A stretch of DNA of 5,033 bases. Source: Octopus sinensis (lineage: Eukaryota). Below, piece after piece: positions 1 to 5,033 of the stretch. Location of the stretch: NCBI RefSeq assembly GCF_006345805.1, contig NW_021830189.1, forward strand, positions 1 to 5,033, read 5' to 3'. Both the position numbers and the translations under genes were made by a program. A model generated the notes under the pieces. The model did no database searches, was not told where the DNA came from, and saw only the letters and a program-made list of their open reading frames with translations. The number at the start of each line of letters is the position of its first letter. Position 1 is the stretch's first letter.

Positions 1-337
1 TTGTTTAAGAGGAAAACTAAACGGACATTTTGTTTTTTTATATTTTTATATATATTTTTTTCTTGTCTTTTTTCTCTCTTTTCCGTGTTAAGTCTGTGGG
101 TGTTGTGAGGGGATGGTGGGTATTGTGGGATCTTGTGGATGATGTGGGCGTGAGGGTGGTGTTGACGGTTGTGGTGGTGGTTCTGTTGAAAGATTCATGC
201 CTCATCTATAAAGGCTGATTGTTATCATTTAGGAATCAAAGAACCATTTTCTTTTCTTTTATCAAAGATAAGTCGAAGATATTCGATACCTTGCGTTCGT
301 CGTCATCACTGCCATTCCTTATCATCGTATTAGAAAT

Positions 338-365
338 AATGATGATGATAATGACGTCGATGATG

Positions 366-411
<46 letters not shown>

Positions 412-418
412 GGTGATG

Positions 419-491
<73 letters not shown>

Positions 492-522
492 CAACAATAA
501 TAATAATAGTAGTAGTAGTAGT
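338..522. repeat. Compound trinucleotide microsatellite (ATG)14-(AAT)22-(AAC)3-(AAT)4-(AGT)5
   Basis: Read directly: ATG x14 at 368-409, AAT x22 at 421-486, AAC x3 at 487-495, AAT x4 at 496-507, AGT x5 at 508-522, with degenerate AAT/GAT units from about 338. Confidence 0.98.
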
Positions 523-805
523 AAGCCTTGATGCAGTACCAGGCAGTGGCTCTCGTGGCTTCTGATTGGAAGTGTTATCATGTACATTGTTTTGTCTTCG
601 TATAAAATGATGGGCTACAGCAAATATTCTGCTCAATACCACATATTTGCTTGTCAGTTGTTTGACCTTAACAGCCTTAATGACTGACAATATGTGCATT
701 TCTGATCACGATCGCAAGTAGTGGGGGAGAATCATAGCCATGTGTCGAGAGGGATTCTTTGGAGTTTAAATAATTCACCTCTGGAAACATGGGTGTTTGG
801 TACAA
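523..805 (+). mobile_element. Partial copy of a dispersed non-coding repeat, flanked by (AAT)n-type arrays
   Basis: 733-805 aligns ungapped with the reverse complement of 4958-5030 (60/73 identical by hand). Complex sequence between trinucleotide arrays. The 5' boundary is inferred from the end of the array. Confidence 0.7.
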
Positions 806-1008
806 TATAATGATAATAATAATATAAAGACGACTGAAATATACGTTTCTCAAGTTCGATCCGATGATCAGCGGAGATAGAGGTCGATGCAAATATGACG
901 ACGATATTACTTAATATTCGATAGATATTTCACTATAATGATGTCAATTTATTTATATATATATATGTATTTCCCTTCTTTATGTTTTCATGTTTGGATT
1001 AACTTTAT

Positions 1009-1042
1009 ACACACACACACACACACACACACATACACACAC

Positions 1043-1090
<48 letters not shown>

Positions 1091-1098
1091 GTATATAT
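1009..1098. repeat. (AC)n-(ATAC)n-(AT)n compound microsatellite
   Basis: AC run about 1009-1044, AT run 1053-1080, degenerate AT to about 1098. Confidence 0.97.
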
Positions 1099-1513
1099 AA
1101 ATGATAGACAATATCAAAACAATGCATAAAACATACACAAAAATAAATGAACGCAAAGAATATAAATTTTTTCAAGAATGAAAAGCAATTCATTTAATAT
1201 TGATCTTTTGGTGATCAGAAAATTTTATTTAAGTTTAAAATAATTCTTGAGTTTGGAACCAGAAGAAAACAAAAAAAAATGAATAAATGAAAATAACATA
1301 AAAATAGAACATTTTAAGTAAATACACAGATTTTAAGTAATTACACAAACAATCAAACAGACAAATAAATAAATAAATAAATAGATACTGAAGAAGGAAT
1401 GAAAAAAAAATGAAAGAGTTGAATAAGGTGAAAAAATAGGATTGAAAAAATATATCGGAGATACTGAAAATTGCATCGCGATATATAGTAAATAAAAGGG
1501 AAATTTAGAAAAT

Positions 1514-1975: not shown

Positions 1976-2059
1976 CCACGTACACGGTATATTTATTATA
2001 TAGATAGAGTCACATAATCGTATTACAACATTCATACATTTCCATACGCACATACTTTC

Positions 2060-2188
2060 ATGTGTAGTTAGAAGTATGATTCGTAATCATGAGATTTCGG
2101 GTTCGATCCCCAAGAGAATGAGCGCCTTTAACGGCGGTGCCCCAGCATGGTCGCAATTCTCGAGCTTGAACTAGTAAAAGTAAAAGTA
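2060..2188 (+). mobile_element. Short tRNA-derived SINE (tRNA-like head, short body, TAAAAG tandem tail)
   Basis: Box-B/T-arm GGGTTCGATCCCC at 2099-2111. Anticodon-like hairpin ATGA/TCAT (2076-2079/2087-2090) with a 7-nt loop TTCGTAA. No acceptor stem. GC-rich body GGCGGTGCCCCAGCATGG; tail GTAAAAGTAAAAGTA. Confidence 0.65.
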
Positions 2189-2202: not shown

Positions 2203-2233
<31 letters not shown>

Positions 2234-2244
2234 TATATATATAT

Positions 2245-2287
<43 letters not shown>

Positions 2288-2295
2288 TATATATA
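2203..2295. repeat. (TA)n microsatellite, left flank of the hammerhead element
   Basis: Direct reading; a few interruptions, and A-rich just before the element. Confidence 0.97.
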
Positions 2296-2565
2296 CTTAA
2301 AAGAGAGATCTCAGTAAACCACAGCACTTAAACGGAAAACAACGCAGGCAAGAGAAAGAAGTGACGACAATCATTCTATATTAAGTCACCTACGGACGTA
2401 CGTTTCGAAATTAAGTCATAGGAAAGCATAAAAATTAAATAATTATGTGTTACCCGACTACTTTTCTCCTCAGCGTAGACTCTACAATTATGAATAATTG
2501 TGGTATTAAATTGGAGTCACTAGAAGACATCACCCTCACTCATGGTATCAGAGCGAGCGTAAGCC
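2294..2565 (-). repeat. Inverted repeat arm A (left; reverse complement of 2883-3158)
   Basis: TACTTAAAAGAGAGATCTCAG...GAGCGAGCGTAAGCC matches the reverse complement of GGCTTTAGCTCGCTC...GAGATCTCTCTTTTAAGTA, with about 13 differences, mostly 1-nt indels. Confidence 0.98.
2383..2482 (-). ncRNA. Type I hammerhead ribozyme, minus-strand copy; predicted cleavage between 2395 and 2394
   Basis: Minus strand reads GAGUCUACG-CUGAGGA-(stem II)-GAAA-CGUACG-UC/CGUAGGUGACUU. The core is identical to the plus-strand copy; stem I 5' strand lacks one C. Confidence 0.82.
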
Positions 2566-2570
2566 GTGAC

Positions 2571-2666
2571 CTTTTAAGTAGAAAAATAGCCATAACTATT
2601 TGACTGCTATTTCTAAATTCGGTGTGTGGTGAGGCAAATCGTTGCTAAACCCTTAATTACTTAGTA
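2571..2666 (+). repeat. Direct repeat B, copy 1 (tail)
   Basis: CTTTTAAGTAGAAAAATAGCC...CCCTTAATTACTTAGTA equals 3149-3242 except for two 1-nt insertions. Confidence 0.98.
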
Positions 2667-2882
2667 TTACTTAAACTTTCCTCGAATGGGGCTTTTAAAT
2701 GCCGAAATCTACTTGGTGAAATTAATGATTACTCCAAATTAATTGATTTCACCCTATATTATTATTGATAACCATATTTCATCCCAGTAAATGACCGCAA
2801 CATCTTATTCTGGCAGCACGCTGGTGGGAGGAGGATGGTGACATACTTTCATTCACCCTTTGAATTTGGTGGTACTGGTAAT

Positions 2883-3158
2883 GGCTTTAGCTCGCTCTGA
2901 TACCATGAGTTGAGGTGATGTCTTCTAGTGACTCCAAATTTAATACACAATTATTCATTATTGTAGAGTCCTACGCTGAGGAGAAAAGTAGTCGGGTAAG
3001 ACATAATTATTTAATTTTTATGCTTTCCTATGACTTAATTTCGAAACGTACGTCCGTAGGTGACTTAATATAGAATGATTGTCGTCACTTCTTTCTCTTT
3101 TGCCTGCGTTGTTTGCCGTTTAAGTGCTGTGGTTTTACTGAGATCTCTCTTTTAAGTA
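2883..3158 (+). repeat. Inverted repeat arm A (right; ribozyme-sense orientation)
   Basis: Reverse complement of 2294-2565. Confidence 0.98.
2966..3066 (+). ncRNA. Type I hammerhead ribozyme; predicted cleavage after GUC at 3054
   Basis: Stem I CCTACG 2970-2975 / CGTAGG 3055-3060 (alternatively CTACG/CGTAG extended by GAGTC/GACTT across a GT bulge). Core CTGAGGA 2976-2982 (CUGANGA). Stem II 2983-3042 closed by GAAA/TTTC. GAAA 3043-3046. Stem III AC/GT with GTAC loop (3046-3053). C17 at 3054. Confidence 0.88.
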
Positions 3159-3239
3159 AAAAATAGCCATAACTATTTGACTGCTATTTCTAATTCGGTG
3201 TGTGGTGAGGCAAATCGTTGCTAAACCCTTAATTACTTA

Positions 3240-3242
<3 letters not shown>
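3149..3242 (+). repeat. Direct repeat B, copy 2 (3' end of the element)
   Basis: Matches 2571-2666. Its first 10 nt overlap the end of arm A, and it runs directly into (TA)n. Confidence 0.98.

Positions 3243-3303
<61 letters not shown>
3241..3303. repeat. (TA)n microsatellite, right flank of the hammerhead element
   Basis: Direct reading. Confidence 0.97.
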
Positions 3304-3627
3304 CATACACGTTGTAATGTAAGGGGAATTAAGAAGTAAAATAAGTAAAATGCACATTGGAAATTTAAAGACGGCCATGATTGATCGTTAGCCACTACAC
3401 ACATTTTTTCTCTTCTTGTTTCTCTCCTTGTTTTTTTCTGTGTCCCTTTCTGTAGAAGAGCGTAGGCTCGAAATGTAAAATACTTTTTCTATTCCTGAGC
3501 GTTATACTAATACATCTGTTTGTTTTGTACACCACCTGTGTTCGTCTTTTGTTTTTTTCGTAAACTCTCCCTATATATATATCGTAAAGTATATTTGCCA
3601 TCAAAACGTGGCTGACCCGTAAGGGAT

Positions 3628-4403: not shown

Positions 4404-4527
4404 GATCAACTGGTAGACTCGCGAGCGCGTCGGACAGAAGGCTTTGAACTATTTGTGCTGATGGCCAATTTTGCTTTCATCCTTTCGACTCAAAAGTTTA
4501 GACCTTGTGCCTATAGAAGAGAGGACT
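4404..4527 (+). mobile_element. Degenerate, internally deleted SINE remnant followed by a simple-repeat tail
   Basis: CpG-rich head CTGGTAGACTCGCGAGCGCGTCGGAC, motif TTTGCTTTCATCCTTTCG, and CCTTGTGCCTATAG immediately before (CTT)n(ATT)n. Resemblance to Octopus SINEs is recalled, not searched. Confidence 0.45.
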
Positions 4528-4536
4528 CTTCTTCTT

Positions 4537-4609
<73 letters not shown>
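4528..4609. repeat. (CTT)13-(ATT)14 compound microsatellite
   Basis: Direct reading: CTT run 4528-4566, ATT run 4567-4609. Confidence 0.98.
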
Positions 4610-4727: not shown

Positions 4728-5033
4728 ATTATTATTATTGGGTGAGAGAGCATTGCATGCCATCAAAGTGACACCGGGGTAAAATATACGAAGCCCAGTA
4801 TACCCATGATGACTACCCATATAATAATGGTACACCAGGCACATGCATCACAACCATATGTGCGCGACATGGTGATGTGGGGCCCAGTTAAAATTTTTTT
4901 CAGGTCGAGTACCCCATCCTGCTCAAAAGGTCCCTGAATGAGGGTTGTTTAAGAATGTTGAACGAAACACCAATGTTTCCAAAGGTGAATTATCCAAACC
5001 TCAAAGAATTCCTCTTAACATATGGTTATGTTG
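4728..5033 (-). mobile_element. Second copy of the dispersed repeat seen at 523-805, with an (AAT)4 3' tail; truncated by the window edge
   Basis: 4958-5030 is the reverse complement of 733-805 at ~82%. The minus strand ends ...CTCTCTCACCC-AATAATAATAAT (4739-4728). Confidence 0.7.

What the first reader, a model, noticed from the sequence alone, without database searches (positions are those of the whole stretch)
2966..3066. Intact type I hammerhead with a 2-bp stem III and palindromic loop (dimer-cleaving type)
Seen: all core elements in correct order and pairing (CUGAGGA, GAAA, GUC cleavage triplet, 6-bp stem I CCUACG/CGUAGG). Stem III is only A-U and C-G around GUAC, inside the self-complementary octamer ACGUACGU (3046-3053). 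Established: PLE-associated and newt/satellite-type hammerheads with such short palindromic stem III cleave efficiently as dimers. Inference: this ribozyme needs a second sense copy (tandem or in trans), which this inverted locus does not supply in cis.
Basis: partly seen in the sequence, partly recalled or inferred. Interest (0 to 1): 0.9.

Follow-up and report, generated by a model that had tools for sequence, protein, structure and literature searches.

The report
Retroelement-borne hammerhead ribozyme, inverted pair
The hammerhead self-cleaving RNA motif is really there, but it is the ordinary kind carried in thousands of copies by Penelope-like/retrozyme retroelements of animals, here sitting in a head-to-head double insertion inside a (TA)n microsatellite.

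Summary
A complete type I hammerhead lies at 2970-3060 (+): helix I 6 bp, CUGAGGA, helix II, GAAA, a 2-bp helix III inside the palindrome ACGUACGU, and GUC with the cut at 3054/3055. A structural descriptor finds it and a second copy at 2480-2388 (-). It finds nothing in 2000 shuffles. Rfam Hammerhead_1 aligns over its full length to both copies, but at 24.0 and 20.1 bits, below the gathering score of 34. A 56-nt insert in helix II is the obvious cause.

The ribozyme belongs to a non-coding unit of about 576 nt. One copy (2573-3243, +) is 1.16 units long. A 5'-truncated copy (2571-2296, -) abuts it head to head. The 3' ends face outward into (TA)n. This matches the published insertion signature of Penelope-like elements and their non-autonomous derivatives. 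The unit RNA is strongly self-paired only in the ribozyme's polarity (z -5.6 against -1.7).

"Dimer-cleaving" is plausible thermodynamically but not established. Published invertebrate hammerheads with a 2-bp helix III plus tetraloop cleave well as monomers. A read-through transcript of this locus buries the ribozyme in a hairpin of about 275 bp. No homologues could be retrieved, so there is no covariation evidence. Verdict: new member of a known kind, low to moderate interest.

The parts
2203..2295 (.). Left half of the (TA)n microsatellite that received the insertion
   Evidence: TRF: (AT)47.5. It abuts the 3' end of the inverted copy.
2296..2571 (-). Inverted, 5'-truncated copy of the element (segment A only). 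Its 3' end ...CTCTTTTAAGTA runs into (TA)n.
   Evidence: Inverted repeat arms 2350-2478/2971-3099 (99%) and 2478-2571/2877-2970 (86%); pairwise alignment.
2388..2480 (-). Second hammerhead copy. It has a 1-nt deletion in the 5' strand of helix I (pairing kept, with G-U pairs) and a G-to-C change that unpairs one distal helix II pair.
   Evidence: Descriptor hit; RF00163 at 2389-2479, 20.1 bits, full model; alignment.
2573..2667 (+). Segment X: the 3'-terminal part of an upstream unit, forming a pseudo-LTR-like direct repeat with 3149-3243
   Evidence: Direct repeats D2/D3, spacing 576-577 nt, identical apart from two 1-nt differences.
2668..2880 (+). Segment M: single-copy part of the unit. 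It holds a local hairpin at about 2715-2755 and the 5' strand (2781-2854) of a long-range helix.
   Evidence: Folding of the permuted unit.
2881..3148 (+). Segment A: the part of the unit shared with the inverted copy. It carries the hammerhead.
2970..3060 (+). Type I hammerhead: helix I 2970-2975/3055-3060; CUGAGGA 2976-2982; helix II 2983-3042; GAAA 3043-3046; helix III and palindrome 3046-3053; GUC 3052-3054; predicted cut 3054/3055
   Evidence: Direct reading; descriptor and shuffles; RF00163 24.0 bits, model 1-45; centroid fold shows helices I and II.
3073..3144 (+). 3' strand of the ~60-bp interrupted long-range helix with 2781-2854 (51 Watson-Crick and 9 G-U pairs)
   Evidence: sense z -5.6, antisense z -1.7.
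3149..3243 (+). Segment X': 3' end of the direct copy. It extends about 85 nt beyond the point where the inverted copy ends (a candidate 'tail').
3241..3307 (.). Right half of the (TA)n target microsatellite
   Evidence: TRF: (TA)34.

Best explanation
The motif is a genuine hammerhead ribozyme sequence of the canonical metazoan type I design: helix I 6 bp, helix II 4 bp then an extension, and a 2-bp helix III inside a palindrome. It is carried by a non-coding retroelement unit of about 576 nt, of the kind described as non-LTR retrozymes or non-autonomous Penelope-like-element (PLE) derivatives. Inferred life cycle: at master loci the unit is transcribed as multimers. The hammerhead cuts after GUC (equivalent to 3054/3055), helped by double-hammerhead pairing of neighbouring units through ACGUACGU. 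The released, highly self-paired 576-nt RNA may then be circularised by a host ligase. It is copied into DNA by a PLE reverse transcriptase/GIY-YIG endonuclease, which nicks AT-rich DNA on both strands. This locus is the product of one such event in a (TA)n tract. Two cDNAs were primed from the two sides of the break, giving copies joined 5' to 5' with their 3' ends outward: a 276-nt truncated copy on the minus strand and a 671-nt (1.16-unit) copy on the plus strand. The two copies end at two different internal 3' sites (...AAGTA and ...TTAGTA). At this locus the ribozyme is a passenger. A read-through transcript would fold into a hairpin of about 275 bp that hides it. Only separate sense transcripts, or RNAs from other copies, could cleave. 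Shown: the motif, its duplicate, the repeat architecture, the (TA)n flanks and the strand-specific RNA folding. Inferred: the PLE dependence, the twin-priming origin, and cleavage itself.
For: Motif and significance. Architecture: the inverted arms and the 95-nt direct repeat with 576-nt spacing, flanked by (TA)n on both sides. No ORF with a Pfam domain and no tRNA in the window. The unit RNA is strongly self-paired only in the ribozyme polarity: circular MFE -157.3 kcal/mol against shuffles at -122.6 +/- 6.2 (z -5.6), while the antisense gives -111.9 (z -1.7). The long helix has 9 G-U pairs. GC is 36.6%. Literature match: PLE insertions are 5'-truncated, form partial tandems (pLTRs), often have an adjacent inverted 5'-truncated copy, carry a variable 'tail', and prefer microsatellites, with (TA)n observed for the Naiad clade (PMC8557442). 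A purified PLE protein nicks AT-rich DNA, extends both strands, and starts reverse transcription at two internal sites (PMC11167929). Minimal hammerhead pairs on opposite strands 100-700 bp apart have been reported (PMC4209133). Animal retrozymes carry canonical type I hammerheads, have low GC and are highly self-paired (PMC7229834). They have been proposed to be PLE derivatives (bioRxiv 10.64898/2026.07.22.740005). Dimer thermodynamics.
Against: This is a single locus. No other copy of the unit was retrieved from any collection. Unit length, tandem origin, copy number and helix covariation are therefore untested. No reverse transcriptase or GIY-YIG sequence is in the window. The unit (576 nt) is longer than the 170-400 nt reported for animal retrozymes. 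The candidate tail (about 85 nt) is longer than the 30-40 bp reported for PLEs. The Rfam score is below the gathering threshold. The inner part of the inverted repeat is 86% identical and the outer part 99%, which a single simultaneous insertion from one template does not predict. PLE hammerheads cleave poorly in vitro, and cleavage was dispensable for insertion in vitro.
Confidence: 0.7

Rival explanations
1. Obligate-dimer ribozyme. The monomer is inactive, and cleavage happens only when two sense copies pair through ACGUACGU and swap helix I strands. This locus would then be catalytically silent unless supplied in trans.
For: Helix III is destabilising in the monomer (+1.0 kcal/mol), and the hammerhead fold (-17.4 to -18.5) is not the MFE (-21.1). 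The dimer MFE of -52.0 has the double-hammerhead topology, and the explicit double hammerhead scores -49.4. The literature reports that short palindromic helix III ribozymes cleave as dimers (PMC4209133; PMC6765202).
Against: PMC7229834 describes a 2-bp helix III plus tetraloop as the usual invertebrate form, and the coral and mussel ribozymes cleave as monomers (kobs about 0.8 and 0.1 per min). Even the 2-bp axolotl variant shows 22% monomer cleavage in one hour. Nearest-neighbour energies ignore the tertiary contacts that stabilise the active fold.
Confidence: 0.35
2. Foldback or MITE-type DNA transposon with ~276-bp terminal inverted repeats, inserted at a TA site. The hammerhead-like sequence would be an inherited or accidental passenger.
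For: Long, nearly perfect inverted arms directly flanked by TA-rich sequence. No coding capacity.
Against: The structure is asymmetric. The 95-nt segment X' lies outside the right arm and repeats X, which lies inside next to the left arm; this is a tandem, not a TIR, feature. RNA folding is strand-specific and G-U rich on the ribozyme strand. The complete ribozyme motif is not expected by chance. No target-site duplication can be read in (TA)n.
Confidence: 0.08
3. Hairpin-RNA locus. The head-to-head pair is transcribed through and processed into small RNAs that silence the element family, and the ribozyme is irrelevant at this locus.
For: Read-through transcripts of either strand are predicted to form a duplex of about 275 bp (-540.7 and -515.6 kcal/mol for 948 nt).
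Against: There is no expression data, no promoter evidence and no conservation data. Such structures arise automatically from PLE-style inverted insertions, so no selected function needs to be assumed.
Confidence: 0.1
4. Chance resemblance: not a ribozyme, only a fortuitous set of short boxes in AT-rich repeat DNA.
For: The Rfam score is below the gathering threshold, and the motif was missed in the default wide scans. The two copies are duplicates and therefore not independent. There is no covariation.
Against: 0 hits in 2000 shuffles. The full-length Rfam alignment has all pairs canonical, and helix III matches the family consensus ACGcgCGU. G10.1-C11.1 and the 6 bp/4 bp helix lengths are typical of canonical animal hammerheads. 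The motif lies on the strand on which the unit RNA is structured and in a PLE-type insertion.
Confidence: 0.04

Closest known systems
Canonical type I hammerheads of animal non-LTR retrozymes (Cervera & de la Pena 2020, PMC7229834)
   Same: Type I topology, helix I 6 bp, helix II 4 bp at its base, and a 2-bp helix III capped by a palindromic tetraloop. The host unit is non-coding, low in GC and highly self-paired. A more-than-unit-length arrangement is present.
   Different: Loop 2 is replaced by an extension of about 50 nt in helix II. The unit is about 576 nt, against 170-400 nt. Only 1.16 units are present here, not an array. Loop 1/loop 2 tertiary contacts could not be assessed. Expression and circularity are unknown.
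Hammerheads of Penelope-like elements and the PLE insertion architecture (Cervera & de la Pena 2014, PMC4209133; Craig et al. 2021, PMC8557442; Frangieh et al. 2024, PMC11167929)
   Same: Palindromic short helix III and G10.1-C11.1. Partial tandem (pLTR-like repeat), an adjacent inverted 5'-truncated copy, insertion in (TA)n/AT-rich DNA, and two alternative 3' ends ('tail'). Pairs of minimal hammerheads on opposite strands 100-700 bp apart have been reported.
   Different: No RT/GIY-YIG ORF in the window. [quoted passage not shown] The candidate tail is about 85 nt, against 30-40 bp.
Newt/salamander satellite 2 and axolotl HHR_Amex1 hammerheads (dimer-dependent)
   Same: Type I, very short helix III with a palindromic loop, and predicted double-hammerhead pairing.
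   Different: Those have a 1-bp helix III and sit in large tandem arrays of about 330 bp. This one has 2 bp and is in a dispersed, inverted insertion.
Rfam RF00163 Hammerhead_1
   Same: Full-length alignment to all 45 model positions with all pairs canonical. The helix III consensus ACGcgCGU is close to ACGUACGU here.
   Different: 24.0 and 20.1 bits against a gathering score of 34. There is a 56-nt insertion where the model has about 10 nt.

Membership tests
Hammerhead ribozyme, type I (RF00163) | Core C3 U4 G5 A6 N7 G8 A9 between helices I and II | tested here: met
   CUGAGGA at 2976-2982 (N7 = G), directly between helix I and G10.1.
Hammerhead ribozyme, type I (RF00163) | G12 A13 A14, A15.1-U16.1 pair, and H17 (not G) at the cleavage site | tested here: met
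   GAAA 3043-3046, A3046-U3053, C3054.
Hammerhead ribozyme, type I (RF00163) | Three helices around the core with helix I open (5' and 3' ends in helix I), and a G10.1-C11.1 pair | tested here: met
   Helix I 6 bp, helix II closed by a hairpin with G2983-C3042, helix III closed.
Hammerhead ribozyme, type I (RF00163) | Score at or above Rfam's gathering threshold (34 bits) | tested here: not met
   24.0 bits (+ copy) and 20.1 bits (- copy). No hit at all in the wider scans. A 56-nt insert in helix II is the evident cause.
Hammerhead ribozyme, type I (RF00163) | Helices supported by covariation among homologues | tested here: inconclusive
   Only two copies are available. Their differences are a 1-nt deletion that keeps helix I paired through G-U and one disruptive change in distal helix II. 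No homologues were found.
Hammerhead ribozyme, type I (RF00163) | Mg2+-dependent self-cleavage 3' of position 17 | not testable with these tools
   Needs in vitro transcription.
PLE 'min-HHR' (Cervera & de la Pena 2014) | Palindromic positions 15.2-16.2 and loop 3 | tested here: met
   ACGUACGU 3046-3053 is self-complementary. The predicted octamer duplex is -9.8 kcal/mol.
PLE 'min-HHR' (Cervera & de la Pena 2014) | [quoted passage not shown] | tested here: not met
   G10.1 follows A9 directly. Helix I is 6 bp. Helix II is 4 bp before an internal loop. The design is the 'canonical' one described in the same paper.
PLE 'min-HHR' (Cervera & de la Pena 2014) | Located in the pLTR of an element encoding RT plus GIY-YIG endonuclease | tested here: not met
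   No such ORF in the 5-kb window. The ORFs are low-complexity, and 10 of them give no Pfam hit. An autonomous partner elsewhere in the genome cannot be tested.
PLE-type insertion architecture (Craig et al. 2021; Frangieh et al. 2024) | 5'-truncated copy or copies in partial tandem, giving a pseudo-LTR | tested here: met
   X 2573-2667 repeats at 3149-3243, spacing 576-577 nt.
PLE-type insertion architecture (Craig et al. 2021; Frangieh et al. 2024) | [quoted passage not shown] | tested here: met
   The minus-strand copy 2571-2296 abuts the plus-strand copy starting at 2573.
PLE-type insertion architecture (Craig et al. 2021; Frangieh et al. 2024) | Insertion into microsatellite or AT-rich DNA | tested here: met
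   (AT)n 2203-2295 and (TA)n 3241-3307 flank the composite.
PLE-type insertion architecture (Craig et al. 2021; Frangieh et al. 2024) | Optional 30-40 bp 'tail' caused by two reverse-transcription start sites | tested here: inconclusive
   The two copies end at different 3' positions about 85 nt apart...AAGTA and ...TTAGTA. The length differs from the published tail, and this is a single locus.
Animal non-LTR retrozyme (Cervera & de la Pena 2020) | Short tandem repeats (150-450 bp), each with one type I hammerhead | tested here: inconclusive
   1.16 copies of a 576-nt unit on one strand. There is no array in the window.
Animal non-LTR retrozyme (Cervera & de la Pena 2020) | Low GC, highly self-paired unit RNA | tested here: met
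   GC 36.6%; circular MFE z -5.6 in sense and z -1.7 in antisense.
Animal non-LTR retrozyme (Cervera & de la Pena 2020) | Expressed as linear and circular RNA of unit length | not testable with these tools
   No transcriptome of the source organism is available.
Foldback/MITE DNA transposon | Symmetric terminal inverted repeats bounded by a target-site duplication | tested here: not met
   The right end carries an extra 85-95 nt (X') that duplicates an internal segment. A target-site duplication cannot be read in (TA)n.

The most novel reading that the evidence does not exclude
The ~50-nt extension of helix II and the strand-specific ~60-bp long-range helix would define a previously undescribed, larger (~576 nt) class of invertebrate retrozyme. 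In this class the ribozyme is embedded in a rod-like RNA, and head-to-head insertions such as this one would double as hairpin-RNA sources that feed small-RNA silencing of the family.
Probability: 0.1. Interest if true: 0.5.

Novelty: new member of a known kind. Interest (0 to 1): 0.25.

Why it matters
Taken alone, the locus adds one more example to a very large known class: hammerhead ribozymes carried by Penelope-like elements and retrozymes. Its value is illustrative. In one 950-bp stretch it shows the partial tandem, the adjacent inverted truncated copy, two different 3' ends and a (TA)n target. These are the features recently tied to PLE proteins that nick and extend both DNA strands. It also shows that default Rfam scans can miss real hammerheads with long helix II inserts, so genome counts of such ribozymes may be underestimates.

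Tried and rejected
- Rfam scans of the whole window (E<=1) and of 2350-3100 (E<=10) gave no hammerhead hit. Only the 111-113-nt scans recovered it. The miRNA-family hits lie in TA/CA microsatellites far below threshold, and I dismissed them as artefacts.
- Homologue searches all came back empty:
  - The gapped hammerhead pattern in metagenome, viral and prokaryotic genome contigs.
  - A 25-mer from segment X in metagenome contigs.
  - Exact look-ups of two window ORFs.
  - A six-frame chimeric protein query of the whole unit against 5.8 billion proteins.
  - A literal search for the helix III sequence in the paper library, which gave one irrelevant primer hit.
- The supplement of PMC4209133 and the paper by Lunse et al. 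(PMC5785218) are not held, so no sequence-level comparison with published PLE hammerheads was possible.
- I considered that the tRNA-like fragment at 2051-2121 might be a pol III promoter for the element. I rejected this because it is separated from the element by the (TA)n tract and lies outside the repeat structure.
- I considered a larger palindrome spanning the whole window and rejected it. The order of microsatellite and repeat fragment differs on the two sides.

Full report
**1. The observation.**
- Helix I is CCTACG 2970-2975 paired with CGTAGG 3055-3060.
- CTGAGGA lies at 2976-2982 and GAAA at 3043-3046.
- The self-complementary octamer ACGTACGT lies at 3046-3053. In it, A3046-T3053 and C3047-G3052 close the loop GTAC.
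- The triplet GTC lies at 3052-3054, so the predicted cut is between 3054 and 3055.
- Helix II (2983-3042) opens with the canonical G10.1-C11.1 pair and 4 bp (GAAA/UUUC). It then continues through an internal loop into a long hairpin (-11.6 kcal/mol alone).
- Four further pairs (GAGU 2966-2969 with ACUU 3063-3066) can close helix I beyond a 2-nt bulge.

**2. Is it more than chance?** I wrote a type I descriptor requiring helix I of at least 5 bp, helix II of at least 3 bp, both core boxes, A15.1-U16.1 and H17. It hits exactly two places: 2970-3060 (+) and 2480-2388 (-). It gave no hit on either strand of 2000 dinucleotide-preserving shuffles of the window.

Rfam at first gave nothing, neither at E<=1 for the window nor at E<=10 for 2350-3100. 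When only 111-113 nt were submitted, RF00163 Hammerhead_1 aligned over its whole length (model 1-45) to both copies, with no non-canonical pair. The scores were 24.0 bits (E 3.8e-4) and 20.1 bits (E 7.7e-3). Both are below the gathering score of 34 bits. The alignment shows a 56-nt insertion where the model has about 10 nt, which is the evident reason for the low score. An E-value of that size would have been listed in the wider scans, so I read the earlier misses as filter losses. The family consensus for helix III (ACGcgCGU) is the same kind of palindrome as ACGUACGU here.

**3. Surroundings.**
- The minus-strand copy belongs to a long inverted repeat: arms 2350-2478/2971-3099 at 99% and 2478-2571/2877-2970 at 86%. 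Aligned, the arms span 2296-2571 and 2882-3158.
- A 95-nt direct repeat (X 2573-2667, X' 3149-3243) has a spacing of 576-577 nt.
- Both X copies begin with CTTTTAAGTA. The minus-strand copy ends exactly after this decamer.
- The composite is flanked by (AT)n 2203-2295 and (TA)n 3241-3307.
- The layout is therefore: (TA)n, then an inverted 5'-truncated copy (276 nt, 3' end outward), then a direct copy of 671 nt (1.16 units of 576 nt, 3' end outward), then (TA)n.
- The window has no tRNA gene, only low-complexity ORFs, and no Pfam domain in ten ORFs tested.

**4. RNA properties.**
- As a monomer, the hammerhead fold (-17.4 to -18.5 kcal/mol) is slightly less stable than the MFE (-21.1). Helix III costs +1.0 kcal/mol.
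- Two sense copies are predicted to form a dimer of -52.0 kcal/mol with the double-hammerhead topology: intermolecular helix III of 8 bp and swapped helix I strands. The explicit double hammerhead scores -49.4.
- A transcript reading through the locus on either strand folds into a hairpin of about 275 bp (-540.7 and -515.6 kcal/mol) that buries the ribozyme.
- The 576-nt unit, permuted to start at the cleavage site and folded as a circle, reaches -157.3 kcal/mol against -122.6 +/- 6.2 for shuffles (z -5.6). Its reverse complement reaches only -111.9 (z -1.7).
- The difference comes largely from an interrupted ~60-bp helix between 3073-3144 and 2781-2854 with 9 G-U pairs. The structure is therefore specific to the ribozyme's polarity, as expected for an RNA-level feature and not for a DNA palindrome.

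**5. Comparison with what is known.**
- Cervera & de la Pena 2014 (PMC4209133) describe canonical animal type I hammerheads. They have helix I of 6 bp, helix II of 4 bp, and a 1-2 bp helix III capped by a small palindromic loop.
- The same paper places minimal hammerheads in PLE pseudo-LTRs and notes pairs of them on opposite strands 100-700 bp apart.
- Craig et al. 2021 (PMC8557442) list the PLE insertion hallmarks. They are strong 5' truncation, partial tandems forming pLTRs, an adjacent inverted 5'-truncated copy, a variable tail, and microsatellite targets. (TA)n was the target observed for the Naiad clade, which lacks canonical hammerheads.
- Frangieh et al. 2024 (PMC11167929) show that a purified PLE protein nicks AT-rich DNA and extends both strands. 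It also starts reverse transcription at two internal template sites, which explains the tail. Hammerhead cleavage was not needed for insertion in vitro.
- Cervera & de la Pena 2020 (PMC7229834) describe animal non-LTR retrozymes. They are low in GC, highly self-paired and 170-400 nt long, and they carry canonical type I hammerheads.
- A 2026 preprint (10.64898/2026.07.22.740005) argues that these retrozymes are non-autonomous PLE derivatives.
- The locus fits this picture feature by feature. The exceptions are the longer unit, the longer candidate tail, the long helix II extension, and the absence of any coding partner in the window.

**6. The dimer question.** The claim that the ribozyme needs one is not established. 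According to PMC7229834, a 2-bp helix III capped by a tetraloop is the usual invertebrate form, and the coral and mussel retrozyme ribozymes cleave efficiently as monomers. The 1-bp amphibian form was the weakest as a monomer. The 2-bp axolotl form cleaved only slightly better (22% in one hour), and both did much better as dimers. My energy calculations favour dimerisation, but they ignore tertiary contacts. The two copies point away from each other. Divergent transcription from the centre would therefore give two sense RNAs able to pair in trans. This is inference only.

**7. What could not be done.** No homologue of the unit was found in metagenome, viral or prokaryotic contigs, by exact ORF look-up, or by a six-frame protein search. 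Copy number, unit boundaries, covariation and the autonomous partner therefore remain untested. The two copies in the window differ in the ribozyme in two ways. A 1-nt deletion keeps helix I paired through G-U pairs. A G-to-C change unpairs one distal helix II pair. This says nothing either way.

**8. Verdict.** This is a real hammerhead motif of a well-known class, in a retroelement insertion with the known PLE/retrozyme architecture. I rate it a new member of a known kind, with interest 0.25. The most novel reading not excluded is a larger rod-like retrozyme class whose head-to-head insertions also act as hairpin-RNA loci. I give that about 10% probability.

Noticed in passing
window 2781-2854 and 3073-3144: Strand-specific long-range helix of about 60 bp (51 Watson-Crick, 9 G-U) within the 576-nt unit. 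The sense fold has z -5.6 and the antisense z -1.7.
   Followed up: yes
window 2051-2121: tRNA-like fragment on the + strand with a B-box-like GGTTCGATCCC. Rfam tRNA scores 20.9 bits, below the 29-bit threshold, and ARAGORN finds no gene. It is probably a tRNA-derived SINE remnant just upstream of the (TA)n tract.
   Followed up: partly
window 730-805 and 4955-5033: Two fragments of another dispersed repeat in opposite orientation, about 80% identical. The second is cut by the window end.
   Followed up: partly
window 336-508, 1009-1099, 1514-1975, 2203-2295, 3241-3307, 4527-4609: Very high microsatellite load ((ATG)n, (ATA)n, (AC)n, (AT)n, (TCT)n, (TTA)n) with GC 22-40%. This is typical of some SSR-rich invertebrate genomes. 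The source organism was not identified.
   Followed up: no
window 987-1109, 1589-1992, 3240-3310: Rfam miRNA-family matches (mir-3149, mir-297, mir-1277, mir-568, mir-4012) at 24-36 bits against thresholds of 75-100. All lie in TA/CA microsatellites and are artefacts of low complexity.
   Followed up: yes
window 2960-3070 and 2378-2490: Rfam scans of 5 kb and 751 nt miss a hammerhead that a ~110-nt scan finds at 24 bits. Ribozymes with long helix II inserts are likely under-counted in routine annotation.
   Followed up: yes
window 2478-2571 vs 2877-2970 and 2350-2478 vs 2971-3099: The inner third of the inverted repeat is 86% identical and the outer part, which includes the ribozyme, is 99%. 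This uneven divergence is not explained. Possible causes are different template RNAs, gene conversion, or constraint on the ribozyme-containing part.
   Followed up: no
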